Source: Lytechinus pictus (lineage: Eukaryota). From it: a DNA stretch of 64,000 bases. The stretch spans positions 35,774,001 through 35,838,000 of the forward strand of contig NC_087246.1 in NCBI RefSeq assembly GCF_037042905.1, read 5' to 3'. A program made the position numbers and the translations under genes. Under the pieces are notes generated by a model. It was not told the DNA's origin. It made no database searches and saw nothing but the letters and a program-made list of their open reading frames with translations. Positions 2,579 through 61,478 of the stretch are shown here, in pieces (the stretch's first letter is position 1; every line of letters begins with the position of its first letter).

Positions 2579-4568
2579 TCAGACAGTCGTAGCCGGTACG
2601 GCGGTCGTTGGCCCAGGGGTAGGTGGCGGGTTCGTATTTCCCCGTCGGGTTGGCATGGTGGGAGGATGGAAAGCTCTCCTTGCTTTAAGGGCTGTTAAGT
2701 TAAAAACACACATGTTTTAATTTCATTAAAGATCTTATGATTAAGATGATGCGAAGAAGTGGCATTAAAACATGGTTCTGGTTTCATGATAATCACTTTT
2801 CTTCAACACAATTACTTTTGACCTTTTACTTTGAGTTCTGAAAGAATTCTAGGGAATATGTAATTAGATTGTGAAAGTAGTTTTGACCCTATTATTGTCA
2901 AATAAGTATAGAGAACGGGAGAGGAGATCAATTAATGGAACGAAATGAAGAGGAGGTGCCGAGTATGCAGAAAGAGAAGAAAAATAAAAAGAAGGAGAAG
3001 AAGAAGAAGAAAAGAAGAAGAAAAGAAGAACAAGAAGAACAAGAAGAATAGGAGCATAAGGAGGAAGAAGAGAATGAGGAAAATATAGGAATAATCAAAA
3101 TGTGCAATAAAACAAATAAAGGTGAAGAGAAAGATTGATAAGATATAATAACAATGATGACAAATGTGTGAAAGATTTATCAAGAAGTTATATATTTATA
3201 TCCTATCTGTCCCGTTGTTGCTGCCTTGCCTCTCATGGTCTCACTATCCGACTGGCCCATACATGAACCGTCATTTCCCCCAGTTATTTATTGTTTTGTT
3301 TATCATTTAAAACGATAATAAACAAAATACTCACTGGTACAACGATCGACGACTGTTGAAGGTGTTGCACACACGATCTCCATAGCGGCACAACCATCGA
3401 AGACCGTCTGGACAACGGAACGTTCATCGAGGTAGCAGAGTTGTTTATTGTTCGCCTGATCGAGGTAGCTCTCGACTCTGTCGCCATTGTAACCCGGAGT
3501 TTCTCTCACCCCCTCGGCGTAGTCGTGCACGTGATCGAGGACCTCAGAGTTACAGCCACCCTCGCCTCGCTTCTTCTCCTCGTATCCGGGGCAAGACTTG
3601 ATAAGATGTTCGTAGATACTTTGTTGACCATTTCCATGATGAGCTGTATAACACAAAGAGATGGGTATTGGCGGTAATGCATTTGTTAAATGTATTAAAT
3701 TTTTTAATATTAGTAACAATTCAATAGCAATAATAATAATAATATAAAATAACCGACATGGTAATAATCATATTGATATGAGCAACTAGGTTTATGATAA
3801 TGATACTGATAACAATCACAAGCGCAACAAGAAAAAAATATTCCACTATGACCCCATTGTCCCACTCCTCTGAACATGCATGTGTACTTGTACTACTTAA
3901 TTTGATATAAATTCTAGTAAAATAACAGTTTTTACTACATACGCTATTATACTACTACTACTACTACTACTACTATTACTACTACTACTACTACTTCTAC
4001 TACTATTACTACTATTACNNNNNNNNNNNNNNNNNNNNNNNNNNNNNNNNNNNNNNNNNNNNNNNNNNNNNNNNNNNNNNNNNNNNNNNNNNNNNNNNNN
4101 NNNNNNNNNNNNNNNNNNNNNNNNNNNNNNNNNNNNNNNNNNNNNNNNNNNNNNNNNNNATGCTACTACTTTTGTTTATACTAATAATGCTGGCAAATTT
4201 GCAATTGCACTTGTCTCTCCCATTTACTTACGGAATGCTTCAGATATCGCGATGTAAGATAACACAACCAGGCATATTACAGCAGTTCGTTTCATCTGAA
4301 AAAAGAAATATATATATATATATACAATCACAATCAGGTGAAGCAATGTGGAAATCACTTATAGCCTAAAGTCTTTAAAAAAGTAGTACAGTTAGTACTA
4401 CTTTTTAATTCAAACACTCTTCAATTTACTGTAACATGGAATATAAGACAGTGATATATTACAAAGAATATCTAGAATGAAGAATAAACTAAATTTCCAG
4501 ATGAAGCTAAAGCCAAAAAAATGAAATGTTTGAAGAAAATTCTACAATTCACTTACAGTTGTGGCCAT
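2579..4568 (-). CDS. G1: secreted six-Cys domain protein, 165 aa; exons 4557-4568, 4232-4295, 3335-3643, 2579-2691
   Basis: All introns are GT-AG with phases 0/1/1, and the spliced CDS (498 nt) is open: MATT|MKRTAVICLVVLSYIAISEAF|PHHGNGQQSIYEHLIKSCPGY...GCAAMEIVCATPSTVVDRCT|TLKARRAFHPPTMPTRRGNTNPPPTPGPTTAVPATTV*. It has a hydrophobic signal peptide, and TATAAATA lies at 4666-4673 (-). Intron 2 contains an N gap. Confidence 0.85.
4019..4159. other. Assembly gap (N run) within a (TAC)n microsatellite
   Basis: 141 Ns. Confidence 0.99.
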
Positions 4569-4673: not shown

Positions 4674-5624
4674 CTTTTCTCACTCTCCAGGCAAACAAAC
4701 TAAACATCACTTCTTGTAGAAGAAATAAAAGAAATATGTTGCCAGCAACTGTTCATTGAGATTAAGACAATGTCCACATTAAGGACAGTGAAATAATAGT
4801 AGCCTAGAGTCAGTGGATTTGTCAATTGTCAATTCATCACAGAGAGAATGTCAGGGGGCCTCAAGCTTGCCACAATCCTTCTCAGTCACGTCGGTAGAAC
4901 CTGCGCTTTGTTTCTTTGTAAGATGGATTTCAATTGATTTGATACAGAGTGTTATGAATGAAATATTTGGATTATTGCTTGTTTCGTGACATTAAAGAAT
5001 GTGAAAGTGACCGAATTATGAGGTCAATTGACTTAAGATACTCCCACATTGAGGGAAATTATTATTTTTTTTACTTAATAGTTCACTTGGAACAACTCAT
5101 ATTGTCTCTGTTTTATTTTTGTAACCTTCAGTTTGTCCGGTACTTCAACTAGGTCTTTTCATTCCCATTCGCTTTGACATTTAGTCGAAATATTTATAGC
5201 AGCTTCAAATTCAGCAGAATGAGTATTTTGTTTCATCATTCGAATAATTAATGTGATATTTTAAATTTCCGTTACAGCGTGAATTCATCCTCTACCATAT
5301 TACATGTATAGCCTTATTTATGTTGCTTCAAATTACAACTTCTCCCTTCTTACATCTTTTGATCAATATTGCTTATATTTTTTTAGCAATTCATTAAAAA
5401 CAAATTCAAGAGAGATAAGTTCTTTTTTATATTTTAAAACGCTGTTGTAATGTATCATGTCAGACTCTCTTTATCTATTAAACTATAAATATGCTACCTC
5501 CCCTTCTCTCTCTCTCTCTCGGTTATTTCTCTATCGCACACTCATATACGCGCGCACACACCCTCCCACATACACACTACACAAACCCGCACATCAACAC
5601 ACACCCAATCGAGTAAGAGTATTG

Positions 5625-8744: not shown

Positions 8745-11700
8745 TTAGGCGGTCATGGTAGGTTGATTGGTTGGAAAATTAGCTGTAGTAGGAGATACGG
8801 GGTTGGTTGTAGTCGGTGCCTGGGTGACGTCTGTATTGTGAAAAAGAGAAGAGTTAAAGGCAAGTTGGTTATATCTGCTGACATGTAACTGATTTTTATA
8901 TCATTGCGATCTCATTGTATTTTTTTTTTATATTGTAAACGTATGCATTTGGTAACATGCACTAATAAACTTCCAATTCCCCGTATGAGAAAAAAAAATC
9001 AATTATAAAATCCAACAACAACAACAACAATACATTAATTTGCTTAAGGAATTGTTATAACATGATGTTATGGATATCATGTTATATGAGAGGTACAAAA
9101 TAATACTTGCAAATTATTTGATATATAGATCTGAGTTCAAAATAAGTATCTTAACATGTAGATGTTTAATCGATATATACATAATTTGTAAACAATTTTT
9201 TTGCATTACTCCTATGTGTTTAAGATCGCATGCTCGATCTGTAATGAAAATTATAAGTCAGAAAAAAATGGAACCAGTGGGATTCGAACCTGCCATCTAC
9301 TGCTTTCCGGGCAGCGACTTAACCACCAGGCTATTCTGATTCACGGCTAAATCACGATGAACTGGAAATAAAATACCCTCGATCCTCTTCTTTCCGACTT
9401 CCTAGTTCCATTTTACTGACTTATGATTTTCATTACAGATCGAGCATGCGATCTTAAACACAAAGGAGTAATGCCGAAAATTTGTTTACAAATTATAATT
9501 TCCTTCTATTAAAGCCTCTTTATTTACGATATATACATGTTTTGTTTTGACCTGCGGGCTAGTAAATTAATTAAAGGTTAAATCAGATGATATAATTTCG
9601 CCTCATCACTCACCTTGGCACCTAATGAGGTTCACCTTTGAAGGACCACAAACTGCTTCCATGGCTGCGCATGCGCTGAGGATGGCGCCTCCCTTGGCGT
9701 TGCAGAAAACATTTCCCCCTTGAGCCAAGTCTAGGATCTCCTCTACCTTGTTACCATCCCAATTCTGAAAGGGACCTCGAGGTGTTTCCAGATTTTCTCC
9801 GTGTTCTTTCACGTCTTCGATCACGTTTTCAAAGTCGCAGCCGCTAGCACTTTCTTTGTTGTAGAATGCACACATCTCTAGGAGGTACCGCGTTTCCAGT
9901 GAAGTGGTAGTAATTGCTGAAAGAGAACATTGAAAAGCATAATTGGTCACATATCTTTTTTAAACCGTGCACAGTCACGTCGGCATATGCATGTATTAAT
10001 TTTCAAAAATTTGCTGTAGGATAAAAGAATAGTGTAAGTGCATATCAACGCTGCTGATCAAGGGCAGAAGTGCCATGCCGGGATTCGAACCTCGGACTGA
10101 GTGAGGTCTCTCAGACCACACAACCACTGAAAATCTACAAATCCCTCTGAATAATTCGATATTAAATGTATGACGTTAATTATAAAAGGATTGCCAAAGC
10201 CTGTCATTTACTTCCTAACCATCAACATGATCAGAGAGCGACGAACTGTGAACAATTTTAGAATAAATTAACAAAAGAGCGGGGAAGAGTTTCAGAATAG
10301 AGAATTATCTTGGGGCCTAATGAATGCAATTTGTAAACGATTTGCAGGATAGCAAATTTGAATTTTTTTGTACCGTTTATTTTTCAGTGGCATTAAGAAC
10401 GCAGTTATTTATACATGATCAGGCATGTCAAGGTTAACACGTTTATTTCTCTGTCTCTCTCTCTTTCTATGTCTCTCAAGAGAGAGAGTGAAAAAATAAC
10501 GCATGCATTCTTGAAAGTTAATTTCAACAAAAATAAACTTGAATTGTTTTCAGAGTAGTAAATAATTATCGGAGTGCCGGTAGAGTTCCTTAGAGAACAT
10601 AGGTAAATTTCGAATTAATGTAAGGTTTTGATACCTCATTAACTCTTACTGTGCCAATACGAATACCCCTTGACTGCCAGGGGTATTCGATGGAATCCTA
10701 AATTGACCGAAACGTGAGCAGCGACTGATTTTAAAACGGTCATAATTTTTTACCCGTACGTTGTATAATAAAACTTTCTAAACATGAAATGATGCATGGT
10801 TCATGGGCTTTATGGTCGTGTTATTATCTTTCATATTCGCGTTTGGAAAAATTGAGAAAATATGTAATATTTTACATCGTTTTTTTTCAATAAGTAAAAC
10901 CTAGAAAATAATGATTTCATGAACATTTCAAAGAGTAAATAACCTGAGGAATTGTAGAGATACCAAGAAATTACGAAGATAAAATGAAAGTTCAATGTTT
11001 AACCTTTCAAATGACGTATCTATTTATGATATTGAACAAACAGAAATAACGAAAAAGTATGCTCTTTTGAATGAAATACTATTTTGCTATTCAAGTTATT
11101 TCCTCTGAAGTACGAGAGAGTATGTATAAAGGCATTGTCGTCGATCAAGTGACCAATCACAGCACAGCTGCGATCCCCACGCAAACACACACAACAATAT
11201 ATTAGTGCCATGTATCTTCAAAGTGCGGCCAACCATACCCTTTCATTCTATAGTCTTCAAAATAAGACTCTGTAATTTTTTTTATTCGTAGTGTAAAAAA
11301 CAAAGTTATTGCCAGTCAGAAGGAGACAAAATATAAAAGAACTAAAGATGATATATTGAAATATAGATAAAGAGGGGTCGGACAGATTCAATACTTACAA
11401 GTTTGGGGTATAAAATCCCACAAAATAATATGGGCGTTCTTGGCAAAGTGCACAGAAGTAAGAAAAAAAAAGTTTAAATTTTTTTGTGAATCAAAGAAGA
11501 GGGAATGCAGATCAGTTACAAACAACAAAATCAATACAAATTTTCAAAAATAAAATAGGCCTATTTGTTCTGTATTACTGGTCTGACCAAAGTAGCCACC
11601 TGTTAACATTCTACGTGAGTACATTCTTTTGTTCATGCCACCAAGTCATGAACAATAGATGCCCAGACTCTCTTTCATGAGGAATCTCTAATCCGCGCTC

Positions 11701-18271: not shown

Positions 18272-18408
18272 NNNNNNNNNNNNNNNNNNNNNNNNNNNNN
18301 NNNNNNNNNNNNNNNNNNNNNNNNNNNNNNNNNNNNNNNNNNNNNNNNNNNNNNNNNNNNNNNNNNNNNNNNNNNNNNNNNNNNNNNNNNNNNNNNNNNN
18401 NNNNNNNN
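18272..18408. other. Assembly gap (N run)
   Basis: 137 Ns next to ATT/TAC microsatellites. Confidence 0.99.
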
Positions 18409-21509: not shown

Positions 21510-23226
21510 TTACACTGCATTTGTAACAGGTCCCATATCTGCAATATTGAGAAAAAAAGTCAATGAGATGGTCGATTGATAAAGAAATTTCCTCACCCAG
21601 AATATTACATTTTTATCAGATAGTCTTGGGATATATTATATTTCCACTTGAAAAAGCATGAAAAATATTATACTCTTTGAATTAGTCTAATTAGATCAAT
21701 GAGCCATTCAAGAAGATATGCCCTCATGATAATTAATCCTGAGTTAACAAAATACTTTCAAAAAATGTTTTTTAATCAAGACCATTTTGCCAGTACCTGA
21801 ACGAATTGCTAACCTAGAGATGACCGCAATATTCATACTATATTTGTGTCTGGATCGTACTCACCTTTGCAGTTCATCACATTGACATTGTTCTCACAGA
21901 CCTGCTCCATGGCTGAACAACCATCCTTGAGGTTAGTCACCTGTTCTCCATCGGGCGAGAAGCACAGCTTCCCTTCCTCTGCCTTCTCCAGGTAATCCTC
22001 AATCTGCTCCTCATCGATGCCAACGAGTCCCTCGATCTCATCCGCCTCGTCGATGACTTCCTCGATGACGTCAGCATTACACGTGCCGCCTTCGTCCATG
22101 AGCTCCTCCCTGAACAGGTCGCACGCGGCGTCGAGGTGAAGGGAGATCTTCGACGTGAAAACTGCAGGAAATGAGGTAGCAATGAGAGTAAATGAATGAC
22201 TTCCTGATCCGAGTTAAGTGAATTACGATCGAGGGTTCACTTATACCGTGATCATGACATACTTGCAACTGCTTCAAAGGGGGTACTAATACGGCTATAC
22301 TACTTTCATTAGAAACTTTCATGACCTGTGTGCTCAATTTAAAGGTTGAGGTTCGAATCAAATCAATGAACTTCAAACCATTGCCCAACAATCTATGCAG
22401 GTCATGACTTTGTCGTGTGCATGTGTTGTACCCCTCGACACAACTTCTATTAAATTGGAAAAATGCACAAACATCACAAACTAGCATTTTTGATTACTCA
22501 GCGATCTGCTCTAGATAACCTAACACAGGGGCCGTGGAACGGTTTTCAAAGTGTGGGGGGGGGGGGGCTGACCATGCAAAAAATCACAATCATATGGTCA
22601 TTTTTACGTTTTAGTACATGGATTCAGAAAAAAGTGGGGGGCTGAAGCCCCCCCCCCCCCCCCGCTTCCGCGGCCCCTGTAACAAACTACAAACTTTGAT
22701 ATCTTCAAAAAGACTTAACATACCCTTAGCTTCGGCACTTCTTATAGCTGCACCAGCTATCACAACAAGGCAGAGTACAGCAGCAACATTCATCTGAAGA
22801 AGAAAATGTAATAAAGCAGATATTAGTTTTGAATTGCTCAGCAAGAAATGGAGGGAGGGAATCGCCTTCATGTGACGTTTTCATGACTTTTATCATGTGA
22901 CGGCTAACAAACTGACATGTACGTCTGCAACAGATAAAATGGACAATTATTCGATTTAATTCCAGTATAGTTTTAAGTAGAAAAATACAAGGAACAAAAT
23001 AATGTATATCTATCAAAAATATTGCTTGCGATCTTAGGCGGTAATAATAATGTGAAGGAAACGATCTTTTTTAAACTTATGATATTTACCATCTTTTCAT
23101 TGTTGGTACGTTTGCTATTTGAAAACTTATTATATGATAGGCATTTGTTTTCTTTGCATTTTGAACAGCCATCTTTTACTTCTACGATTGATTCTTTTTT
23201 TTGAATGAACTCACCGAAATGCCCAT
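21510..23226 (-). CDS. G3: secreted, highly acidic six-Cys domain protein, 135 aa; exons 23215-23226, 22724-22793, 21865-22161, 21510-21538
   Basis: Spliced CDS 408 nt: MGIS|MNVAAVLCLVVIAGAAIRSAEAK|VFTSKISLHLDAACDLF...DGCSAMEQVCENNVNVMNCK|DMGPVTNAV*. Canonical splice sites. TATAAAA at 23391-23397 (-). Confidence 0.87.
22526..22679. mobile_element. Short poly-G/poly-C MITE in G3 intron 2
   Basis: TIRs caggggccgtggaa...ttccgcggcccctg. Confidence 0.7.
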
Positions 23227-26349: not shown

Positions 26350-28714
26350 ATGAAAACGTATGGCAAAAAAATGTCAGGTTCAGAAAGGAATCGTGTACGC
26401 TTATTCTTGTGGGTTGTTCCAAGAACTATATCGACAGCCTTGACTAAATGTCTCAGTGCCATCGAAGGAATGGAAGTTTGGTTCGAATGTTTCGTTGCAT
26501 GCAGTGCAGTTCGGAAACAATATCAGCTTGCCACCGGTGAAGATATTCCGATGACCTATGAAGGAAATGAAGAAAAGGCACAACAAGCAGCTACAATATT
26601 TAAGCCTTTCGTCGGCTGCGAAATTGAGCCCTCTCGAATTTTGTAAATATACGGGCTTTATCAATTATCAAAAGCTACCACAATCAACAGTTTGCACTTT
26701 ATTGAATTTCGTCCCATAATTATTTGCTCTTGTTTGAAATCCCCATGATGTCATGATTATACAACTTAGTTGGTATGGCGTGTGTGTGTGTATGTGGGGG
26801 GGGGGGGGTAAGAGTGGATGGGTGTGTGTAAGCGTAATAACTATCAGTATTATTGTTATCACCCCTATTAAACAAAATATGTGAAGTACTCCTTATTACA
26901 ACAGATTACTAATAACACTAACTTATGGATATTTCAATGACAAGTCCATCCCACCAAAAAGTTGATTTGAACAAAGAGAGAAAAATCCAACCAGCATAAC
27001 ACTGAAAATGTCATTAAAATCGGATGTATTTTAGTTTTGCAGAATTGTATAAACAGTTGTATGCACATCCTGGTCGGTATGCCAATGAGGGGATTAATGA
27101 CGTCACTCACTCACTATTTATTTTGTATTTTATCTTATGAAATATGAAATATTCTAATTTTCTCCTCAGTGGAAGGTGAAACTAGTTTTCTTCCTCCAAA
27201 AACATGGGGAATTACAATTGTTTAGACATTTAATGCTTCAGTCAAGCTGGTCCTTATTGTCAAATCTGTAAAAATTGAAATATTGTATAATTCAAACTAT
27301 AAAAAAACAAAAGAATTAGTGAGTGAGGGACATCATCGACTCTCTAATTTGCATGTTCCTGAGTTGTGCATATAACTGTTTTGTGAAAAATAAGCGAAAC
27401 TTTAGAATGTCATAACTTTCTTATTTTACATCCGATTTTGACGAAATTTCAAGCGTTATTCTTGTTTGATTTTTTCCTATATTAATTCAAATCAACATTT
27501 TCTGGGGTGGACTTGACCTTTAAGGATGCTTCTGAACGTATATAGGCTTAAGCATTTGTATTCAGATCAAAATTTTACTTGTACTGTTGCATGGTTTCCT
27601 TATTTTCATGCAAAATTATTTATGTTTCTTAGTCACTTACCTTGGGCAAATGTTGGGATATACATTTTGTCATGGCCTTTGGTGCACCTTACTTTAATCT
27701 GGCACTAATATCTGAATTCATGAATTTCTCCAATTATTTTCAACAAATCAGTTAATTCAAACAACTGGAAATAACTTTCTTCTAGTTTATAGCTTTAGTG
27801 ATAAAGACGCTGTTTTTTCGTTAATGTAGGATTATTCATGATAAAAACGACTTTTTTCACATGTTCCATGATAAATCAATTCCTGTGTAATATTATCGAA
27901 GGGAAAATTTAAATTCACATTTTTTTCATTAAAGAAATGAGCACAGTCTGTGAGCGTATGTTCCTTCACTTATACAACCCTTAATGTGCATATTGCACTT
28001 TTATTGAAATAAGTGAACATTAAATTGTTCCTTCGAACACAAATAAATGTAGGTGAACATCTTTTTTTTTTTCTTTATAGGTTTGCTGATGTGCAGCAGA
28101 AGATAGAATCTTCAGATAGCAGATACATCTTGGCAAAAGAAGGTGGATTCATCTTTCTTGATGATAAATCACGACAATACATACCACGGGGATTTCAACA
28201 CGTCTTCCTAATCCGGGATCCGTATAAAGTCTTCACCTCTTACAAGAAGGCCATTATCAGTCACATGACTCAATTAGGGTTATGGAATGGCGATGCAGAA
28301 TTATTCAACCTTGAGAAGGATGACGCCATACTGAATCCTCGTGAGTTCTTCAGGGAAACTTTCGAACTGTGGAGGTATGTCCGTGACAACGTGAATCCCA
28401 ATCCAATCGTGCTCAACACAGATGATCTGTTGGCCAACCCTGCTGAGGTCCTCTCTAAATTCTGCCATCTGACCGGCCTTCCGTTCAGTGATTCACTTCT
28501 CCAATGGGATGCTTCAGCGGACGCCACCAAGAAGTGGAAATTATCGATCGATCGAGCATTGGATGACCGGATATTTTTCAAGACAGCCACCAATTCCAGT
28601 GGATTTGCACCACCTACACCCGCTATCCCCCTGGACACGGTAGCTCCAGATGTCAGGAGGCTTGCAGAAGCATCAATGCCATACTTCGAGGAAATGAACA
28701 AGTACAAGATGTAA
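26350..28714 (+). CDS. P-loop sulfotransferase-like protein (Sulfotransfer_5 / BCAT-like protein 2 N-terminal type), about 301-308 aa; exons 26350-26642, 28081-28714
   Basis: A phase-2 intron (TT|gtaaat...ttatag|G) joins ORFs 26311-26646 and 28013-28714 in frame. Motifs: 5'-PAPS-binding loop LWVVPRTISTAL, 3'-PB motif HVFLIRDPYKVFTS, and the segment DDLLANPAEVLSKFC..TGLPFSDSLLQW. No signal peptide or TM segment. An acceptor at 26344 implies an upstream non-coding exon. The start is 26350 or 26371. Confidence 0.85.
26937..27519. mobile_element. TTAA-type (Kolobok-like) palindromic MITE in the sulfotransferase intron
   Basis: caagtcca...ggggtggacttgacct|ttaa. Same family as 42128-42723. Confidence 0.75.
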
Positions 28715-31774: not shown

Positions 31775-34700
31775 TCAGTCAATTCTCCTGGACCGAGTAG
31801 TTGTCTTGGCTGTCGTGCTAGGTGTCTCATTGGTCACTGTGGCCATTTCTGTAAAAAGAGAATAAATATAGACATCTATATATAGACATACACACGAACA
31901 CACACCCTATTTTATGTGAACTGAAGTGGAGAGACCTGTGTGGAAGATTGGACATTTCGGGCAGGCTGGTAGTCTTCGGTCTTTCTGAAAAACCGAAAAT
32001 CAACCTGCTCGAAACGTCAGGTCTTCTCTCCTGCTACACAGCTTTGCATGATGTCCTTATAAAATACAAATGTATACGTATTTTCGTCAGATTTTAGCAT
32101 TATACCAAGAAACTGAGTGTTCACCTTTCCGTTTTATTTAGGCCTATTCTTTTTTTACGCGCAAACACACACAAAAAAAGTATTTAAAAAATACATGGAA
32201 TAATGCAAATATAGAAGTAGTAGAATAAGAATAAGAAGGAGAAGAACGATAGAAAGAAGAACAAGATGTAGCGGAAGAAGAACAAGAAGGAAGAGAATGA
32301 GAAGAAAAAAAAGAAAAGGGAGAAGAAGGAGGAAAGGGAGGAGGTGAAGATGAATAAGAAAAACAAGAACAAGATGAAGGAACAGAACAAGAAGAAGAAA
32401 AAGGGAGAAGAAGCAGGAGGAGGAAAGAGGAAAAAGGAGAAATAAGAGGAAGAAGAAGGATAAGAAGAAAAATGGAGAAGGAGAAAGAGCAGGTAGAGAG
32501 GAAAAAGAAGGAGAAGATGAAAAGGGAGAAGAATGAGGAGGAGAAGGGGGAAAAGGCCGGTTATTGCTACACTCACACCGGCGAAATTCAGGATAAACTC
32601 CAGATCAACAAAGGCATTTAGCTTAAATGCCTACCATCGGACAGTTATTTAGTATGTTTGGTTCGTGTGAACAGGTGAATGTATCATCAATGGGTGGGCT
32701 GGCTTTCATGTAGCCAATTAGCCCAAATTCTACTCACGATCGCAGTCCATGACGTTTTCTTTCCCGTTACACACGGCATCCATCGTAGCACATCCATCCC
32801 GTAGACGAATCACTGTAGTTCCATCAGGAGAAAAGCACATCTTGCCCGGTTTGTTGGCCTCGATCAGGTATTTCTCGATCATGTCGTGGTTTGCACCAGG
32901 TACCTCGATCTCGTCGACTTCGTCAATGACCTCCTCGTAGACGTCGGGATCGCACTTCCCTCCTTCGTCCGCGACTTCCTCGGCGAACAATGTACATGCA
33001 TCGCTCAGGTAAAGGGCGGCCTTTGATATGAAAACTGTAAGGAAGAGGGCAAAAATAATCCGATTGCATCCTGACATGCTTCATAAATTATAGCCCTAAA
33101 CAAACACTGATAAAAGGGATGATGATGACTTTGTTGTTGTTGTTGTTGCTGATGGTGGTGGTGATGATGATGATGATGATGATGAAACGATAATAACACT
33201 GAAAATACCAATGACAACAAAAATGTTGAATTATGATATCTATGATAAAAAATAGATATGATAACAAATGATGATAGTCATGATAATCATGATGCTTATA
33301 ATAGTAATAATAGCAGTTGTATGAATAGTGATGATAACGTCGTTTATAAATCGCTCGAAATATTTATATTTTAGATCAAAATAATTCCACTCTTTCCCCG
33401 CTCTCTCAAATATAACAGAGTTCTATGGATTCAATTTATTTGTACAATTTTGTTTGATGCATAATCCAATCTTGATTATATGCTGTTTTATCATCAAATG
33501 CTATATTGTCATTGGGCAAAGTGTAGTGGTTCAACCCCCCCCCCCCCGCAAACCCCGTCTACACCCCGTCCTCTGAGTTATAAAATGTTTGATTATACTG
33601 TATTACAATAAATTGATATGATTGAGTGCTGTATGAGAACCTAATATTTTATTTGCATGGTATCCCTTTACAAAATTAGAACACTTACCATTTGCCTGTG
33701 TTTCCTTAACCAAAGAAGAGCAAAGGCACATCAGACAAAAGATACAGGAAAGCTTCACCTGAGAGTCAATCAAAAGGCATCGCAGACAATGTAATTCGAT
33801 TCATTTCACTTTCGGTGATTAAGATAGAGTTTTCTGGACCTGACCAATACGACAATTTCTCCCCTTTTGTTTTAAAGAACAAGACTTAATTGGAATCAAG
33901 TTACGGACGCATGACAATACCTATGAGTGACGATTCAGTATTTAATGATTAAAGATACAAAACTAGAGACCTCTTACTCGATTAAGGTCCAATCTCATCA
34001 AAGCTTTAAATGAAGAGCTCACTTGCAAAATGGGTTAGGTCCATTTTTCATCATTTTTTATTTTTATGTCTCAATGTATAAATTTTTAGTAGCTCTATAA
34101 GATGATACCAAAGAAAAGTTGAAATTTCTATCAAAAAGTATACCAAAATGGCAAAGAAAAATCACTTTTTTTCAAAAGGGGTTAGGTCCATTTCAGTTTA
34201 GTTGCAAAAGGGGTTAGGTCCACACATAATCTTTTTGGAAAAGAATATCTTAAAAAATATGAAGACAGGTAATTTTCTTTTATACCCAATTTAATGTTAT
34301 CATGGTAGTGTATCATGAAAATTCAGTTTCGCATAAGAATATTGCAATATGGGAGAATTAAAAAAATTATATTCTTGGAGTGGACCTAACCCCTTTTGCA
34401 ACTAAACTGTTCTGAAGAACTCATTTGTCAAAAGGGGTTAGGTCAATTTTTCATAAATTTTATTGTTTTCTGTCTCTAAACCTCTAAATGTTTAGTCACT
34501 CTGATGATACAAAAGAAAATTTGAAATTCAAATGAAAACGTGAATGAAAGTGGCAAAGAAAAATCAATTTTTTAATAAAAAAAGATTGGATCCATTTCAG
34601 TTTACTTGCAAAAGGGGTTAGGTCCACGATGATAATTTGTTTTTTAATATATAGAAAAAGAATTGAAGACAGGTAGATTTTTTTTATACCCAATCATATG

Positions 34701-45095: not shown

Positions 45096-46892
45096 TCAGT
45101 CTGTTTCACTAGATTCAACGGATGATGATTCGGCAGAGACAGACGAAGAACGTCTGAAACGAGCTGCAAGCAAAGAAATATAATTAGAACAAAATTGGAA
45201 TGATCATTAACATACGAAGAAACTCCTAAGGCTAACCAGAACATTGATATGCAGTGGTGCTAAAAATTTAGTGAACCCCACCAAAATATGCACTCGTTCA
45301 TGTTGATGGTTGAATGTATCGACAACACTACAATGTTTGATGAGCACAGAGAAACAAACTGAATGTATTATTTTTTCACCTGACTTCACATTAAAATATC
45401 TAAAAGATGGCAGAACTTGATCGCTTTTAAATATGCTCATTTTTTGGTGGGGTTCACTAACTTTTTAGCACCACTATATCAGTCAATTTCCACGTATTTT
45501 GTATCACTACACTTACATGACTTTGGACAATTTCACCGTGTCAGAAAAAAGTAGAGAAATTTGAATAAGACATAAGGAGATATTGAAATATAACCCACCT
45601 GTAGAAGAACAGTCGACAACTTCAAGGCAAATTTTCTCCAAGATTTCACAGGCATCAGCGCTATCCTGCTCTCCTTCCTCTACCAAACACACCATATCAT
45701 TCTCAGCTTCATCAAACAGGTTCTGTTCAGTAGATGTGAGAAGTCCTCTTAGGTCTTCTTTACACGTGTCAACCACCTGCCTGTATCTGTCACATAGAGC
45801 TTCGAACTGTGCAGTGCGATCGGTAGTTTGGGCTAGAAATCAAGGAAATTATCAAATAATGATGATTCGTTGGCTTTACCAGTATAACACACATAGCAAA
45901 CAGATAATTTGCATAATATAATAATGATCTGCATCATCGTAATAAGATACAAAATAATTGCACCAAAAAAAAATAATAATAACAAGTTTTGTTGTGTAAT
46001 ATGGAAATTCGCTTTCCTAAAAATATGAAATATCATACACATCAGCAATTTACAAAAATGATGAAAGACATAATAGATATATACCCGAGTAAGAAATATA
46101 TCTGCAGATTTCGAAAAATACATCTCCTTCTCTATTGATTTTTAAATGAAAAAATAAATATTATACCTTTTACTTCCATTGCAAAACATGCAACGAGACA
46201 CAGACAAACGCAGAATGTTTTTACCTGTAGAGGGGATGAATAGATAAAATACTCAATTTTATACTATATACAATTACAGTTTAAATCGTGAAATGAATTA
46301 AAGTATTAATTGAAATTCAATAATCAAGGAAGTCCATGTTATTGCAGATAAGTGTAAGGATCTGTTCGGACCAATTTCGATCGTTCATTAGATTTAGAAT
46401 TAAAGTTTTTACAAATAAATCACACAAGGTATAAGATTCCTACCCCAAAACGGAAGGAAAATAAATGATTTAAAAAAAATGAATCATAAAAACAAATGAG
46501 GATAAAATGAAATGAAATATAGATATAAAACGAGAAGGATATGATTTTTTATTTTAAATCTTAGGTTCCCTTGTATTTTCAATGTAGAACAGAAAATGAA
46601 GAAATTGGTGATATGATTAATATAAATGGAATTCAATAGCAAATACCATTAGTATACTCCGACCTGTGCGATTTTAGATAAGCATTTGGTATATAATACA
46701 GATTTCTATTTCTATTTCATTGTAAACATTTTTCAAAAGATATTTAATTTTATGTTATCAAATTTAATATTTTTTCTTCTCATTATATCCATAATATTCT
46801 TAAAAAGTGAAAACTAAATCAGATTTACACAGTTTAAACAGTTTCTGCTGGAATGATTTGGAAAATAATGGTGTACTTACCGATTGAGCCAT
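45096..46892 (-). CDS. G6: secreted six-Cys domain protein with RFRR + Ser/Glu tail, 123 aa; exons 46881-46892, 46167-46224, 45599-45832, 45096-45163
   Basis: Spliced CDS 372 nt: MAQS|VKTFCVCLCLVACFAMEVK|AQTTDRTAQFEALCDRY...DACEILEKICLEVVDCSST|ARFRRSSSVSAESSSVESSETD*. All four exons are conserved in frame in duplicate G7. TATAAAA at 46994-47000 (-). Confidence 0.85.
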
Positions 46893-53377: not shown

Positions 53378-56300
53378 TCAGTCTGTTTCACTAGATTCAA
53401 CGGATGACGATTCGGCAGAAACAGACGAAGAACGTCTGAAACGAGCTGCAAGTAACGAAAAGAAAAATGATCATGATTATTAACATACGAAGAAACTCCT
53501 TAGATTCATATGTATGCATATCATAAATTATGAATATGAATATATTCTCTATATTCAAGGATAACATATATCTATTCTAATTACTTCGAAATACTTGTAT
53601 ATCGGTGTGTTTTTTATAGTTTGGAAAAGGAGAGATTATAATAACCTAGCCCAGGTAACAATACAGCGTTGGACCAACGTTGGATCAACGTTGGGAATTT
53701 TTTTCCCAACGTTGCCTCAACGTTGGCAGGCCAACGTTGCATCATCGATAGAAGTGCACGCGCATACATCGTCAGACCAACAACATTTCCAACGTTAGTT
53801 CAACGTTGTCCAGCAACAATGTTTCAACGTTGTCTGGCAACGTTGATCCAATGTTGGCTAAATAGACAAATACAACATTGCTACAACGTTGGTAAGCAAC
53901 GTTGTATCATCGATAGAAGTGCACGTCCATACATCGTCAGACCAACAACATTTCCAACGTCAGTTCAACGTTGTCCACCATCAATGCTCCAACGTTGGTA
54001 TAATGTCGGCTGAGTCATCAATAACAGCGTTGCTGCAACGTTGATGGGCAACGTTGAAGCAGCGATGGACGTGCACTTGCATACATCGTCAGTCCAACTA
54101 TGTTTACAACGTTGGTTCAACGCTGTCCAGCAACAATGCTCCAACGTTGTCTGGCAACATTGCTCCAACATTGTTACAACGTTGTCACAACGTTGCTCCA
54201 ACATTGCTCCAACGTTATTCCAACGTATGGCAGTAATTAACAAAACATTAATTGGTTTCAAGGTGAAGTCCACCATTACAACTCTACACTCAAATCTTTA
54301 TCATCATATGTCTTATCCTATCCTAAAATCCTACATCCTAATCCTATATCCTATTCCTATCATCCTACACCTATCCACTGTAACCTGTCATTGACTCCTA
54401 TATATAGAGCAACTTTGCTATACTTGGCAGAATACAGTTAATATCATTTTCCACACTTAACCTTGAATATTTCACTTAGAATAATATGTTTTGATTATAT
54501 ATGATATGGTAATGGAGCCACATACTTTTCTGAAACTTTTCATGGTGGAAATATTGAATAAACATAAATACTCTAATTATTATAGCAATATTACCTAAAA
54601 TTTTGGTCATTTACTGATGTAATGAATATTCATGAGTGCATAATCATTGTCCAGATGAGGCAGGTATGGCAGCGTTGGTCCAATGTTGGTCCAACGTTGG
54701 GTGACGTTGATCCAACGTTGGTATAATGTTGGTCCAATGTTGATGGAAAGTTGATTCAACTTTAGTCCAATGTTAGTCCAACGTTGGCGTAAACGTTGAT
54801 TCAATGTTTGTCTAATATCGGTTAAATGTTGTTGTAACGTTGATTCTTTGTTGGTCTAATTATAAACAAATCCAACGATGCGCCATCTCCATCAAACAGT
54901 TTTCAACACTGTGCCATCATCATCTGTAATCTGTTCATGATTCTATCAAAAAACATTACAACTATTATTACAGCTATTCATTTCTTTTCATTCTTTCTGT
55001 TACAAGTCTCTTCACATAATTAAGAGAAATCAAGATAATTACGTGTGATATTTATTGAGGCCTTTGTAGCATTCAAACTTTTTTGACATCCTCTTTTTCT
55101 CAAACAAGACTAATACCAAAAAAACATATGCATATGTAATAAAAATTAAGATGTATTACATTTTCTTGCGAGTTGCAATCTCTGTTTCTGTCTACAATTG
55201 TTTAATGACTCGGTATGCAATGCCAATTGCAACGTCAGTAATCATCACAAAAACTCACATGTGTAATTGCAGTCTCTCAGTATTTACAAAATCAAAAAAG
55301 GAGGTCGCGTAACTTGGCCTCACTCAGAGTAACGTAGCTACTGCCTACTGTAACTAAAGAGTGCCTCTTTTTGATTAAGATAGAAGTCAACTGATATCTC
55401 AATATGCATGGCCATGGCCTAGTCTCGCTCGTGCCATAACTATTAAATGATATTTCAGCGTCAAGTGTAGCATGCCTCACATAGCAACTACAGGTTTGAC
55501 TGCAGTTGGAAAACACTCGGTCCAGGCTAGGCCAGGCAGGACCGACCAAGTCAATTCAAGGCAGCGTATAATAAATAAGGCAGGAATGCCAGGTAGCAAG
55601 TCATTTGGGTGATTTCAAGTACGGTGTACGGTGTTGAGTGCGTGAAAGGGCTGCTGAACTGAGCTCCAACACCAAGCGTAATATTATTTTTCATTGAAAT
55701 GTAGTAAAACTCTAATGATTTGCTCTCATCTTAAATGTAAAAGATAATTTTACGGAGATGGTTCGTCGTGTTCGCCCCCTGTTCGTAATAGCTACAGTTC
55801 ATCAACACCAACACTGAACTTTAAATCACGATTCTCCCAATCCCTGGGGTACGTCGGTGTTGCTGAATGGGGAAATTGCTTGTAGATCATCAACACCATG
55901 CAGCCACAGTGCAGTGTTGGGTTCAGCAGATGACAATCAACACCAGCCTTCAACACAAACTGCCGGAAATACACCATATTTTCCTAGGTCAATCTTAACA
56001 CCAGCCTGATTCAAGTACGGTGTTGTCACAACACCAACACTAACCCAGGGAGCTCCAGCCCGCTCAGCGGGCCGGAGCCCAGGGGCTTACCGTGTAATTC
56101 ACCATACCCACGGTAGTAGCGTGAAGTATGGTCTAAATAATTATCCGGATAAATAGTTAAAACAGAAATTAAGCACTTACCACGATTATATGGATGAAGG
56201 TCTAACGATTGGCAGCTTCCTGACATCGAGGTCTCAATCGGCCATTTTGTTTTGAATTCTGAAAGAGGAGAGCTACCGCGACAGAACTTTTCGTTTTTTT

Positions 56301-59300
56301 AGGTTCCAGTCTGTGCCTCGAATCGATGTCAGGAAGCTGCCACTCGTTAGACCTTCATCCATATAATCGTGGTAAGTGCTTAATTTCTGTTTTAACTATT
56401 TATTCGGATAATTATTTAATATTTAGACCATACTTCACGCTACTACCGTGGGTATGGTGAATTACACGGTAAGCCCCTGGGCTCCGGCCCGCGCAGCGGG
56501 CCGGAGCTCCCTGGGTTACACTCACACGTATTGCCAGGTTAGTATTAGTATACTGGGTTACACCAACACCAGATTTCAACACTGTACGTACTTGAATTTT
56601 GAAAATCATCCAATGACTGTTGCCTTGCCATTGGTATCGCATACTCGTTCCCACTCACACGTATTGCGAGGTTAGTATTAGTCACTCACACAAGCTAATT
56701 ACGAGGTTAGTTAGTATGTTATACTGTGCAGTGACTAGTGTTAAGTACTACTTTACTACTACTTACAGTACACGAATATACTAGCGTCGGACTGTACGCA
56801 CACAGAAGCTGACTCCGGGATCTTTCGGAGGGGATCAATGGTTGCAGTTACCGATTATCTGCAAGTGCAAAGAAAATTCAACTGTAGATTGTAGGTCCTA
56901 AATATACAGCTTATAAGTACTGTTCCAGATCACTAGATATTCTGGAATTTACTTATCTATATCCACTATCCAGTCCAAATTCTGCCAGATTCTTCAAGTT
57001 CAAAATTGAAGGAAGCAGACTACACAGACATGACAGGAGTCCGACGTCGCGACTAATTCTGCGCATCAGAATAGTATGGTATTTTTAAATAGGCACATTT
57101 GATGCTTGTATTTCCTTCTTCAATTTCTTCTAGTTATGTGACGGTAGGCCTATGACATATCTCGTACTTACTGTGAAAGGCCTTGCCAGCTGCAAAGGAT
57201 CGACGAGGGCGTTTCTGGAAATTCTGGTCTTGAACTACATTTTTTTTCTTGTTTTTCTTCTTTATTTTCTATATTAATCGACACATTTGCATCCCCAGGT
57301 GCATGCAGCCTCTCTATTCTACCCCATCTTTATTTTTGTTTTCCCCTTAGACTTAGTTTTAGTTCCTCTTTCCCTTCCCATTATTTTCCTTCTCTCTCGA
57401 TTTCTTTTCCCCTTATTGCTGGGGGATACCAAGGGTGACATGGATAGACAAGCAAACTTACTTGATCGACCCCCCCCCCCTTGGCCCCATTGGAAATTAT
57501 GCCAGTAGTCTTGTCTTGTCTTGGGTTAAGTCGGCATATGCAGACTTGCTGTACTCCGCCAACTTTATCAATTATCAATTCTCCAATGAACCAGTTTCTA
57601 ACGTTCTCAACACTGTGTATATTATGCCAGGATATTATGTTGACTGTCAAACAAATATCCAACAAACTATAGTTTCCAACATTGTGTCAATGTTAACTGT
57701 CCAATAAACTATTCCAATTACGCTGTCCACGTTGTGCCATTGTCCGTTGTTCAACAACTCTCCATCAAACTAGTTTCCAACTTTGTCAACGTTGTGCCAT
57801 TGTCGACTGTCCAACAAATCTCCAAGAAAATAGTTTCCAACGTTGTTCCTTTGTCGGTTGTTCAGCAACTCTCCATCGAACTAGTTTCCGACGTAGTCAA
57901 CGCTGTGCCTTTGTTGGCTGTTCAACACCTATCCAATCAAACACGCGTTTCCAACGTTGTGACGTTGTTGGCTGTCCAACAAATCTCCAACACACTAGTT
58001 TCCAATGTTGTGCCATTGTCTGTTGTTCAACAACTTTCCAACGTTGCCAACGTTGTGTCATCGTCGACTATCCTACTGATCTCCAATCTACCAGTTTCCA
58101 ACGTTGTGCCAGTGTCAGTTGTTCAACGACTTTCCATCTAACTAGTTTCCAGCTTTATCAACGTTGTGTCATTGTATACTATCTAACTAATCTCCAATCT
58201 ACCAGTTTCCAACGTTGTGCCATCGTCGACTATCCAACAAATCTCCATCGAACTAGTTTCTAGCTTTGACAACGTTGTGCCATAGTTGGTTGTTCAACAA
58301 CTTTCCATCGAACTAGTTTCCAACGTTGCCAACCTTGTGTCATCGTTGACTATCCAACTAATCTCCAACCTACTAATTTCCATCGTTGTGCCATTGTCGA
58401 CTGTCCAACAACTCTCCAACTAACAAGTTTCCAACGTTGCCAACGTCGTGTCATTGTTGATTGTTCAACAACTTTCCAGCGAACTAGTTTCCAACGTTGC
58501 CAACGTTGTGTCTTTGCTGGCTGTCAACAACTATCCAATCAAACGTGTCTCCAACGTTGTGACATTGTCGACTGTCCAACAACTCTCCAACTTACTAGTC
58601 TCCAACGTTGTGCCATTGTCGACCGTCCAACAAATCTCCAACAAACTAGTTTCCAACTTTGTCAACGTTGTGCCATTGTCGGTTGTTCAACAACTTTCCA
58701 GCGAACTAGTTTCCAACGTTGCCAACGTTGTGTCTTTGCTGGCTGTCAACAACTATCCAATCAAACGTGTCTCCAACGTTGTGACATTGTCGACTGTCCA
58801 ACAACTCTCCAACTTACTAGTCTCCAACGTTGTGCCATTGTCGACCGTCCAACAAATCTCCAACAAACTAGTTTCCAACTTTGTCAACGTTGTGCCATTG
58901 TCGGTTGTTCAACAACTTTCCAGCGAACTAGTTTCCAACGTTGCCAACGTTGTGCCTTTGCTGGCTGTTCAACAACTATCCAATCAAACGTGTTTCCAAC
59001 GTTGTGACATTGTCGACTGTCCAACAACTCTCCGACTAACAAGTTTCCAACGTTGCCAACGTCGTGTCATTGTTGATTGTCCATCATCTTTCCATCAAAC
59101 TAGTTTCCAACGTCGATTCAACGTTAATCCATCAAGTTTTCCCAACGTCCAACGACTTTCAAGTTTCCAACGTGGAGCCAACGTTGGCTTGTTACCTGGG
59201 AGATATTTCGTTTGATATGTGAATAAAGAAGGCCAGAAAATTGTAAAAGAGAGAAAGAGAATTAAAATGCTGATAATTATGATGGAAATGCTAATTCTAT

Positions 59301-61478
59301 TCAAAAGTTTCAGTGAGTTCAACTATGTAAACCGAGAAGAGGAACAATCTATAAGAGGATCTTTTGCATGTGTGTCATAAATGCATTTGGACGAGATCAC
59401 AGTGTCAACAAAAGTACAAACAATGGCATAAGGGTATTTGAAGATATTACTTACCTGTAGATGAACAGTCGACAACTTCAAGGCAAATTTTTTCCAAGAT
59501 TTCACAGGCATAAGCGCTATTCTGCTCTCCTTCCTCTACCAAACACACCATATTATTCTCAGCTCCATCAAACAATTCCTGTTCAGTAAGGGTAAGGCGT
59601 CCTCTTAGATCTTCTTCACACGTGTCAACCACCTGCCTGTATCTGTCACATAGGGCTTCGAACTGTGCAGTGCGATCAGTAGTTTGGGCTACAAATCAAG
59701 GAAATTATCAAATCATGATTTTTCGTTGAATTTACCAGTAACATAAATGAATAACCAGTGGAGCAATAAGCCCAAAAGAATTGAGGTGGCAAAATATGGC
59801 GTATCGGGAAAAAAAATTATACATATAAAAGCGAGCGTGCAAAAATGTCGTCATTTTTATTTTCAAAATCCTTTTTTTGTGATAATTTTGACATAACATT
59901 TAGAAAATAATATATTTCATCCTTCTCTCTTTCTTTCCTTTCCTTTTTGTCTTGTTCGTAAAACTTTTGAGGATGGCAAGCGCCCCCATGACCCCCCCCC
60001 CCCCCCCCGTCTGTGCGCCAGTGAGAATCAATATAGTACAAGACAAAAACAATCAGCTCTATTCTTACCAATGGTGAGGACAGAACATGGCAAAACTTCA
60101 ATCTCATTTATGGGTTCACAAATCTGGAATAGCCTTCCTGATGAAGTAAAACGGCTTAAATCTGTAATTCCTTCCGCAGAGCTCTTAAAAACATTTTCAT
60201 ACAAGAATATTCATGAGTTCCTCAATCATTTGTAAATATTGTATATATGTTTTAATTCATTTGTATGCAATTCTTGCTTTTACCCTATTGTGCTAGACCT
60301 ATTATTTTGTTTTATACACTAGTTATGTTATTTGTCGAAGAGCATGATTTGTTAACTTACTATTTAAACGTTCATGCTATCAATTATGATTATGTATATT
60401 GTAGGATAGGGTCTCCACGTCCACTAGCAGTACTTGCTATTTTTGTGGAGTCCTATTACCATTAAAGTTTATATGACAATTTACCCTGTATCAATGTATT
60501 TTGACATTATTTGGTAATAAATTCAGTTCAGTTCAGTAACAAATCTATGATTTATATTGTGCAATAATAATCTGCACCATCATGATAAAACCAAAATCAT
60601 TGCACCAAAATGAACAAATTGACAAGTTTGGTTGTGAAATGTGGGGAAAATATTAACATCCCCCAAACATAGATGTATCATATATAAAAGCGATTTCAAA
60701 ATGATGAACTATACCCAAGTGAGGAATATATCTGCAAATTTCGATTTTTCTCTATTAATTCTTAAATGAAAAAATGAAAAAAATATATACCTTTGGCTGC
60801 CATCGCAAAAACTGCAACGAGACACAAACAAACGCAAAAAGTTTTTACCTGTAGAAGGGAAAATAAATAAAATATTCAATTCATTTGCATACTCTAACAT
60901 CATAGTTTAAATAATCCAAGAATTAATTGAAATTTAGGTAAGACTGTCTTTTTGGAAACAACTTTAAGGATCTTTTCGGGTAAATTCCCTTGTTCATTAA
61001 AATTAGACTTTATTTCTTTACATAGATCTCGCAAGATAAATAACACCCCCCCCCCCTCAAAAAAAAGGAAAGGAATAAATAAATAAAATAAGTAATAAAA
61101 TAAAACAGGATGAAGAGTGATAATTAAATGGAATTAAAAAAATATAACATAAAATAATATAAAAATTGTAAAATTGAAGGAATTCAAAGATAATAAACCT
61201 AATGATTAAAATAGATGGAATTTAATAGCATATACCATTGGCGGACAAAAACATAAAGGTATACCCCGAATTGTGAGATCGTATATAAACCTCTGCTTTG
61301 GTATAATACATATATCTATTTCTATTTCACTGTAAACACTTTCAGAAAGAAATTAAGGCCCATGTCATCAAATTCGTTCTTTTTTTCTCATTATATCCAT
61401 AATATCAGATTTACACAGTTAGAACAGTCTCTGCTGGAATAATTTGAAAAATAATATTGGACTTACCGATTGAGCCAT
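53378..61478 (-). CDS. G7: recent duplicate of G6, 123 aa; exons 61467-61478, 60791-60848, 59455-59688, 53378-53445
   Basis: Same exon lengths as G6 (12/58/234/68), intact frame and splice sites, 11 aa differences from G6. Intron 3 is enlarged by a 5.55-kb transposon and intron 2 by a LINE fragment and a MITE. TATAAAA at 61567-61573 (-). Confidence 0.85.
53650..59200. mobile_element. 5.55-kb non-autonomous DNA transposon (CMC/EnSpm-like) in G7 intron 3
   Basis: Perfect 12-bp TIRs CCCAGGTAACAA / TTGTTACCTGGG with a 2-bp TSD AG. Subterminal arrays of CAACGTTG lie at 53660-54850 and 57590-59190. The element is absent from the G6 intron, and no transposase ORF is visible. Confidence 0.85.
59756..60023. 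mobile_element. Poly-C MITE (cagtgg...ccagtg)
   Basis: Termini resemble the other hAT-type MITEs. It is absent from the G6 copy. Confidence 0.55.
60024..60536 (+). mobile_element. 5'-truncated CR1/L2-type LINE 3' end in G7 intron 2
   Basis: Translates to NQYSTRQKQSALFLPMVRTEHGKTSISFMGSQIWNSLPDEVK, the typical ORF2 C-terminal motif. It ends in AATAAA + (TTCAG)3. Confidence 0.7.

What the first reader, a model, noticed from the sequence alone, without database searches (positions are those of the whole stretch)
45096..45163. G6/G7 tail: furin site releasing an invariant Ser/Glu peptide with three S-x-E motifs
Exon 4 encodes A-RFRR-SSSVSAESSSVESSETD. RFRR matches the furin consensus R-x-[KR]-R. 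SAE, SVE and SSE match the FAM20C secretory-kinase consensus S-x-E. The tail is identical in protein between G6 and G7 (53378-53445), with only silent changes, while the domain has changed. Inference: a cleavable 17-aa phosphopeptide analogous to the ASARM peptides of vertebrate SIBLING proteins (calcium or mineral binding), or an acidic propeptide.
Basis: partly seen in the sequence, partly recalled or inferred. Interest (0 to 1): 0.7.

Follow-up and report, generated by a model that had tools for sequence, protein, structure and literature searches.

The report
Conserved cleavable Ser/Glu tail exon
The last small exon of a sea-urchin-only family of secreted six-cysteine proteins encodes a convertase cleavage motif and a serine/glutamate tail that has changed less than the folded domain, so it probably matters, but cleavage, phosphorylation and function are all untested.

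Summary
On the minus strand, 45163-45096 (G6) and 53445-53378 (G7) are terminal exons. Both encode A-RFRR-SSSVSAESSSVESSETD-stop and differ by two silent bases.

The window is Lytechinus pictus. G6 and G7 are two of 13 intact four-exon genes in one 92-kb cluster. NCBI models, all named 'uncharacterized', splice the tail in this frame.

- **Within L. pictus:** eight copies carry the tail unchanged; five carry in-frame insertions (+ESSET, +SSM) and one of these also an S-to-T change. dN/dS is 0.03 in the tail against 0.37 in the domain.
- **Other urchins:** L. variegatus has the identical tail. Against Strongylocentrotus purpuratus the tail keeps 20 of 22 residues while the domain keeps 43 of 78 (p = 0.001). 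A more distant unidentified source keeps ARFRRSSSV, then a different Ser/Thr/Glu tail that again has three S-x-E motifs.

Most likely this is a convertase-processing module with a Golgi-kinase target tail. Neither cleavage nor phosphorylation is shown. Three S-x-E motifs are only weakly more than the composition gives. Nothing supports the ASARM or mineral analogy.

The scan had already found this family on adjoining DNA. The kind of feature is known; the family is uncharacterised.

The parts
45096..45163 (-). G6 exon 4 (terminal). CT completing the Ala codon 45163-45162; RFRR 45161-45150; 17-aa Ser/Glu peptide 45149-45099; TGA stop 45098-45096.
45599..45832 (-). G6 exon 3: acidic six-cysteine domain (AQTTDRT...VVDCSST). 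Phase-1 boundaries on both sides; donor ACAG|gtgggt.
46167..46224 (-). G6 exon 2: hydrophobic core of the signal peptide (VKTFCVCLCLVACFAMEVK).
   Evidence: It matches exon 2 of the NCBI models.
46881..46892 (-). G6 exon 1, coding part: ATGGCTCAATCG (MAQS) followed by a gt donor. The 5' UTR extent is unknown.
53378..53445 (-). G7 exon 4 (terminal), protein identical to G6. RFRR 53443-53432; peptide 53431-53381; stop 53380-53378.
59455..59688 (-). G7 exon 3: six-cysteine domain, 8 of 78 residues different from G6. Separated from exon 4 by a 6,008-nt intron.
60791..60848 (-). G7 exon 2: signal-peptide core.
61467..61478 (-). G7 exon 1, coding part (MAQS).

Best explanation
Exon 4 is a self-contained C-terminal processing module of a sea-urchin-restricted family of small secreted proteins. 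The precursor has four parts: a signal peptide (exons 1-2), an acidic, probably helical six-cysteine domain (exon 3), the motif R-[F/Y]-R-R, and a disordered 17-22-residue Ser/Glu tail (exon 4). Inferred mechanism: in the secretory pathway a furin-type proprotein convertase cuts after RFRR and separates the domain from the tail. The tail's Ser residues in S-x-E are substrates of a Golgi Fam20C-type kinase, and further Ser residues in S-x-pS could be phosphorylated hierarchically. This would make a strongly anionic peptide or pro-region. Shown here: the exon structure, the reading frame, the motif, and purifying selection on the tail. Inferred only: cleavage, phosphorylation, and what the tail is for.
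For: The frame and splicing are confirmed by sequence and by NCBI gene models. The gene has 13 intact copies, all in a single cluster. The tail is under much stronger constraint than the domain: dN/dS 0.03 vs 0.37, with a binomial P of 0.004 for the shortage of replacement changes. Exon 4 is 95% identical among paralogs while the flanking intron and 3' UTR are 75-81%. All six L. variegatus models have the identical tail. S. purpuratus tails are ARFRRSSSVSASAESSVESSETD and ARYRRSSSVSAESTSVESSETD, keeping 20/22 residues against 43/78 for the domain, p = 0.0014. A much more divergent source (domain 34 of 81 aligned columns, about 42% identical) has a tail exon about 250 nt downstream with the same acceptor and phase. 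It encodes ARFRRSSSV and then ESISNSTESNSTSTET, so the cleavage motif and P1'-P4' are the most conserved part and three S-x-E motifs reappear at new positions. RFRR is the only dibasic site in the mature protein. AlphaFold draws the last ~19 residues of the tail as coil, at low confidence. The genome has at least 5 convertase P-domain loci and 3 Fam20 loci. S-x-E-type serines are phosphorylated in S. purpuratus secreted matrix proteins, for example the phosphodontin EISSGEGEQPK repeats, and Sp-Fam20c was detected (PMC2830187).
Against: There is no direct evidence of cleavage or phosphorylation. No RNA run could be listed, so expression and tissue are unknown to me. No peptide or gene identifier appears in the searchable literature. 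The S-x-E count is only marginally above composition (P = 0.06-0.13). Between Lytechinus and Strongylocentrotus the whole tail is conserved, not just the site, which a disposable pro-piece does not explain. The domain is itself acidic, so a charge-masking pro-piece is unlikely. The signal peptide was judged by eye, not with a predictor.
Confidence: 0.55

Rival explanations
1. The tail stays attached. RFRR is not cut, or is cut only partly, and the Ser/Glu tail, phosphorylated or O-glycosylated, acts as an anionic anchor on the mature protein, for example binding Ca2+, mineral or matrix.
For: The whole tail is conserved between Lytechinus and S. purpuratus, not just the site. In-frame insertions add or keep Ser/Glu units. 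Phosphorylated acidic Ser-rich stretches occur in sea-urchin matrix proteins (PMC2830187).
Against: A perfect R-x-R-R followed by Ser-Ser, conserved at every evolutionary depth sampled, is the best-kept element. In the distant source the tail after SSSV is rewritten. There is no evidence of expression in mineralising tissue.
Confidence: 0.2
2. The released 17-aa phosphopeptide works like vertebrate ASARM peptides, binding calcium carbonate and modulating mineral growth.
For: It is a C-terminal, acidic, Ser-rich stretch with S-x-E motifs and a cleavage motif upstream. The Fam20 kinase is present.
Against: There is no homology to SIBLING proteins, and the family is found only in echinoids. The tail has one Asp and is Glu-based. 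ASARM release is attributed to cathepsin-type cleavage rather than furin (my own background knowledge). I have no skeletal expression or matrix-proteome evidence: the tail and domain strings I searched appear nowhere in the searchable full texts, which include the S. purpuratus shell and tooth phosphoproteome paper, whose main text I also checked directly for the tail strings; supplementary tables were not opened.
Confidence: 0.08
3. The tail peptide is the conserved bioactive product, hormone-like or pheromone-like, and the six-cysteine domain is a carrier or co-product, as in prohormones where the active peptide is the best-conserved part.
For: The tail is better conserved than the domain. 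The precursor is small, has a signal peptide and has a single convertase site.
Against: Thirteen tandem copies, in-frame length variation, and complete rewriting of the distal tail in the distant source fit a compositional role better than a receptor ligand. There is no amidation signal.
Confidence: 0.1
4. There is no peptide-level function. The identity of the tails reflects recent duplication, gene conversion, or a constraint at the DNA or RNA level in the last exon.
For: The copies are clustered. Silent-site divergence in the exons (0.10-0.13) is lower than divergence in the flanking non-coding DNA (about 0.19-0.27). The +SSM tail variant sits on both domain subtypes, which suggests exchange between copies.
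Against: The changes that do occur in the tail are 5 silent to 1 replacement. The tail protein is conserved in S. purpuratus and, in part, in a far more divergent source. Indels are all in frame.
Confidence: 0.05

Closest known systems
Furin/proprotein-convertase substrates with a C-terminal pro-region
   Same: Secretory precursor. An R-x-[KR]-R motif followed by Ser, in a coil (poorly modelled) stretch just after the last disulfide-forming Cys. The site is encoded as a module at an exon start.
   Different: Cleavage is not demonstrated. The family has no sequence relative among known substrates.
Fam20C (Golgi casein kinase) substrates, e.g. caseins, osteopontin, sea-urchin phosphodontin
   Same: A secreted, acidic, disordered Ser-rich stretch with repeated S-x-E. 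Three Fam20 loci are present in the genome.
   Different: There are no phosphorylation data, and motif enrichment over composition is weak. The tail is only 17-22 residues long, not a long repeat array.
FGF23 R-H-T-R|S-A-E site (my own background knowledge, not tested here)
   Same: A furin motif directly followed by a Ser-rich stretch that contains S-A-E. In FGF23, Fam20C phosphorylation near the site controls cleavage.
   Different: Here S-A-E is at P5'-P7', not P1'-P3'. Phosphorylation would reach the P1' Ser only through hierarchical S-x-pS priming. There is no homology.
ASARM peptides of vertebrate SIBLING proteins
   Same: A short C-terminal acidic Ser-rich stretch that could be released and phosphorylated.
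   Different: No homology. Glu-rich rather than Asp-rich. A different releasing protease. No link to mineralised tissue was shown.
Neighbouring six-cysteine genes of the same window and chromosome region
   Same: The same four-exon plan (Mxx-S | VK...signal | six-Cys domain | tail exon). One neighbour, P0049, also ends in a conserved convertase consensus: RSRR-ID, which is RPKR-ID in S. purpuratus.
   Different: Its tail is Thr-rich with N-glycosylation sequons and the basic motif is at the far end. Domain similarity to G6/G7 is only marginal (hhalign E = 0.011).

Membership tests
Proprotein-convertase (furin-type) substrate | Enters the secretory pathway (signal peptide) | tested here: met
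   Judged by inspection: MAQS-VK followed by a 13-residue hydrophobic core and a V-K-A site, conserved in all copies and orthologs. No signal-peptide predictor was available.
Proprotein-convertase (furin-type) substrate | R-x-[K/R]-R motif with a non-hydrophobic P1' | tested here: met
   RFRR|SS in all 13 L. pictus copies, in all 6 L. variegatus models and in the distant source. S. purpuratus has RFRR or RYRR.
Proprotein-convertase (furin-type) substrate | Site lies in an exposed, flexible region | tested here: inconclusive
   AlphaFold draws the residues after RFRR as coil but runs its last helix through the motif itself, and confidence is low (mean pLDDT 43.7 and 54.6).
Proprotein-convertase (furin-type) substrate | Convertase enzymes present in the organism | tested here: met
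   PF01483 P-domain matches over the cut-off at 5 loci.
Proprotein-convertase (furin-type) substrate | Actual cleavage | not testable with these tools
   Needs peptidomics or an in vitro assay.
Fam20C substrate | S-x-E/pS motif in a secreted protein | tested here: met
   Three motifs (four in the +ESSET variants) in every tail variant, including the divergent one.
Fam20C substrate | Motif count above what the composition gives | tested here: inconclusive
   Shuffle P = 0.06-0.13 per variant. The main and the distant tails are roughly independent cases.
Fam20C substrate | Kinase present in the organism | tested here: met
   PF06702 matches over the cut-off at three loci, on C10, C12 and C15. 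Sp-Fam20c is reported in S. purpuratus test matrix (PMC2830187).
Fam20C substrate | Actual phosphorylation | not testable with these tools
   Needs phosphoproteomics.
ASARM / SIBLING | Sequence relation to SIBLING proteins | tested here: not met
   Word-index and exhaustive HMM searches found only sea-urchin proteins plus an unidentified related source. Pfam gave nothing relevant.
ASARM / SIBLING | Expression in, or presence in, mineralised tissue | not testable with these tools
   No RNA run was listed. The peptide strings are absent from the searchable literature.
Syntaxin-5 N-terminal domain (UniProt automatic name for the S. purpuratus proteins) | Cytosolic N-terminal Sly1-binding peptide of a SNARE | tested here: not met
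   Only a 12-residue match (DRTSEFQALCDR), 18 bits against a cut-off of 16.6, in S. purpuratus. It is absent in L. pictus. It lies after a signal peptide, so the topology is wrong. I treat it as a chance motif match.

The most novel reading that the evidence does not exclude
The invariant R-F-R-R|S-S-S-V-(S/E) core is a phospho-regulated cleavage switch. Fam20C-type phosphorylation starts at the first S-x-E and propagates by S-x-pS priming back to the P1' Ser. This would control whether the convertase releases the tail, as Fam20C does at the FGF23 furin site. The released poly-phosphopeptide, not the six-cysteine domain, would then be the conserved active product.
Probability: 0.1. Interest if true: 0.65.

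Novelty: new member of a known kind. Interest (0 to 1): 0.38.

Why it matters
The folded six-cysteine domain has drifted to about 55% identity between Lytechinus and Strongylocentrotus, while the apparently disordered tail has stayed about 90% identical. That is the reverse of the usual pattern, and it points to the tail, and especially its cleavage motif, as the functionally critical part of an abundant, lineage-restricted, wholly uncharacterised secreted protein family. L. pictus is a genetic model urchin, so the prediction can be tested directly by peptidomics and by deleting the tail exon. If phosphorylation and cleavage are confirmed, this would be an invertebrate example of coupled convertase and Golgi-kinase processing. 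As it stands, it is a well-supported sequence feature with an untested mechanism, in genes that NCBI already lists.

Tried and rejected
- **RNA evidence:** The look-up of sequencing runs listed no run. Splicing therefore rests on NCBI models and on comparative evidence.
- **Pfam:** no real domain. The Syntaxin-5_N hit in S. purpuratus is rejected as a short chance motif.
- **ESM Atlas:** no usable hit.
- **Structure:** two AlphaFold runs gave a mostly helical domain and a coil tail, but at pLDDT 43.7 and 54.6. That is too low for a meaningful fold search, so none was run.
- **Exhaustive HMM search:** beyond sea urchins it returned only two low-complexity repeat proteins (P0036, P0037), which I reject as spurious.
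- **Metagenome scan:** no relatives found.
- **Literature:** searches for LOC identifiers, for tail and domain peptide strings, and for the run and assembly accessions of the distant source found nothing. The species of the distant source is therefore unknown.
- **Link to neighbouring six-cysteine genes:** the profile comparison is only marginal (E = 0.011 and 0.063).
- **'Identity is merely recent duplication':** considered and rejected because of the cross-species data.

Full report
**What is there**

Read on the minus strand, window 45096-45167 and 53378-53449 both translate to AARFRRSSSVSAESSSVESSETD followed by a stop. The coding stretch begins right after a ...ttgcag acceptor. Its first two bases, CT, complete an Ala codon with the last G of the upstream exon, which is a phase-1 join.

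**Gene models**

The window is Lytechinus pictus chromosome-scale contig C2:35,774,001-35,838,000. G6 has four coding exons:
- MAQS at 46892-46881
- the signal-peptide core at 46224-46167
- a 78-residue acidic six-cysteine domain at 45832-45599
- the tail exon at 45163-45096

G7 has the same plan at 61478-61467, 60848-60791, 59688-59455 and 53445-53378, with a 6-kb third intron. NCBI predicted proteins of 123-129 residues, all named 'uncharacterized protein', use exactly these joins...FAMxVK|AQTTDRT... and ...CSST|ARFRR.... I could not obtain RNA reads, because no run was listed.

**The family**

The tail exon and the domain exon each occur 13 times, always paired. They lie in one 92-kb cluster in mixed orientation, and nowhere else in the 812-Mb genome. 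All 13 copies are intact.
- Eight carry the tail exactly as in G6 and G7.
- Three have an in-frame 15-nt duplication that adds ESSET. One of these also has a Ser-to-Thr change.
- Two have a 9-nt insertion that adds SSM.

**Is the conservation more than chance?**

For G6 against G7 alone it is not. There are 8 changes in the 78 domain residues and 0 in the 22 tail residues, where about 2 would be expected. Across the family it is.
- Pooled Nei-Gojobori dN/dS is 0.47 for the signal exon, 0.37 for the domain and 0.03 for the tail.
- Minimum change counts are 27 silent and 32 replacement in the domain, against 5 silent and 1 replacement in the tail.
- Given the tail's share of replacement sites, seeing at most 1 of 33 replacement changes has P = 0.004. 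The plainer Fisher test on silent against replacement counts gives 0.09.
- Exon 4 is 95% identical among paralogs, while the last 100 nt of the intron and the first 250 nt of the 3' UTR are 75-81% identical.

**Orthologs**

Six L. variegatus models have the identical tail.

S. purpuratus has at least eleven models, with tails ARFRRSSSVSASAESSVESSETD or ARYRRSSSVSAESTSVESSETD. In a representative pair the domain keeps 43 of 78 residues and the tail 20 of 22, Fisher p = 0.0014.

The exhaustive HMM search also found a 100-residue ORF from an ENA assembly and a Logan run of unknown species. This ORF is the domain exon read through its splice sites. About 250 nt downstream, behind the same ...tgcag|CTCGTTT acceptor and in the same phase, lies a tail exon that encodes ARFRRSSSVESISNSTESNSTSTET and then a stop. 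That contig holds two tandem copies of the domain exon. At 34 of 81 aligned domain columns identical (about 42%), the convertase motif and the next four residues are unchanged. The rest of the tail is rewritten, yet it is still Ser/Thr/Glu-rich with three S-x-E motifs.

**The motifs**

RFRR fits R-x-[K/R]-R. It is the only dibasic site in the mature protein. It sits five residues after the last cysteine and is followed by Ser-Ser. AlphaFold draws the tail downstream of it as coil, though at low confidence.

The genome carries convertase P-domain loci and three Fam20 loci. Every Glu in the 17-residue tail has a Ser two residues before it. Shuffling each tail gives at least the observed S-x-E count with P = 0.06-0.13, so the motif count alone is weak evidence. 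The recurrence of three motifs at new positions in the divergent tail adds a little.

In S. purpuratus, secreted matrix proteins are phosphorylated at casein-kinase-type sites, including the S-G-E serines of the phosphodontin repeats. Sp-Fam20c was itself detected in test matrix (PMC2830187).

**Interpretation**

The best reading, with confidence about 0.55, is a convertase-processing module with a Golgi-kinase target tail. The exon structure, the frame, the motif and the selective constraint are shown. Cleavage, phosphorylation and purpose are inferred.

A charge-masking pro-piece is unlikely, because the domain is itself strongly acidic (pI 4.05, net charge -13). Nothing here supports the ASARM analogy:
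- there is no homology to SIBLING proteins
- the tail is Glu-rich rather than Asp-rich
- there is no tissue evidence
- no trace of these strings in the searchable full texts of published work, sea-urchin matrix proteome papers included (supplementary tables not opened)

A more interesting possibility that the data do not exclude is an FGF23-like switch. The spacing S1-x-S3-x-S5/E5 would let phosphorylation prime back to the P1' Ser and so control cleavage.

**Known or new**

The genes are annotated but unnamed, apart from a spurious automatic 'Syntaxin-5 N-terminal' label on the S. purpuratus proteins. That label rests on a 12-residue motif match in a topologically impossible place. No paper in the searchable library mentions the genes or the peptides.

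Earlier notes of this scan, made on adjoining windows, describe the same 13-gene cluster, its convertase site and the Ser/Glu tail with in-frame length variation. My results agree with them. What I add is the selection statistics, the S. purpuratus comparison for the tail specifically, and the divergent tail exon.

The kind of feature, a convertase site plus an acidic phospho-acceptor tail, is well known. The family is a new, uncharacterised member of that kind.

Noticed in passing
window 53446-59454 (G7 intron 3), especially 57724-59113 and 53867-54846: G7's third intron is 6,008 nt, against 310-450 nt in most copies. It holds a satellite-like array with periods of about 51, 111 and 222 nt (up to 94% matches) and a second set of CAACGTTG-rich repeats.
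   Followed up: partly
window 60028-60204 (-), inside G7 intron 2: The newer NCBI model for G7 (P0007, 142 aa) replaces the signal-peptide exon with an exon from this ORF (SSAEGITDLSRF...). That product would lack the signal peptide. G7's intron 2 is enlarged, at 1,102 nt.
   Followed up: no
window 3345-3608, 9615-9887, 21869-22189, 32736-33077 (all -); tail exon 31778-31849 (-): There are four further six-cysteine domain exons with the same gene plan. The gene at 32736-33077 (NCBI P0049) has a Thr-rich tail exon that ends RSRR-ID. S. purpuratus has RPKR-ID there, so this is another conserved convertase consensus, here at the extreme C-terminus. Its relation to the G6/G7 domain is only marginal by hhalign (E = 0.011).
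   Followed up: partly
window 28013-28714 (+): An ORF with a sulfotransferase domain match (PF19798, E = 9e-10) lies among the six-cysteine genes.
   Followed up: no
cluster copies at G000:C2 35,874,3xx and 35,902,9xx (my g08 and g12): The +SSM tail variant sits on two different domain subtypes (LTLTEQELFDG-type and LTSTEQNLFDE-type). This suggests exchange of tail exons between copies. Both domain subtypes also exist in L. variegatus.
   Followed up: partly
all 13 copies: Silent-site divergence in the exons (0.10-0.13) is about half the divergence of the flanking introns and UTRs (0.19-0.27). This hints at exon-biased gene conversion or at constraint on silent sites.
   Followed up: no
L025:35-337 and 4783-5094: The unidentified divergent source also carries at least two tandem copies of the domain exon, 4.7 kb apart, so tandem amplification of this gene is not peculiar to Lytechinus.
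   Followed up: partly
window 4019-4159 and 18272-18408: Two runs of N (141 and 137 bases).
   Followed up: no
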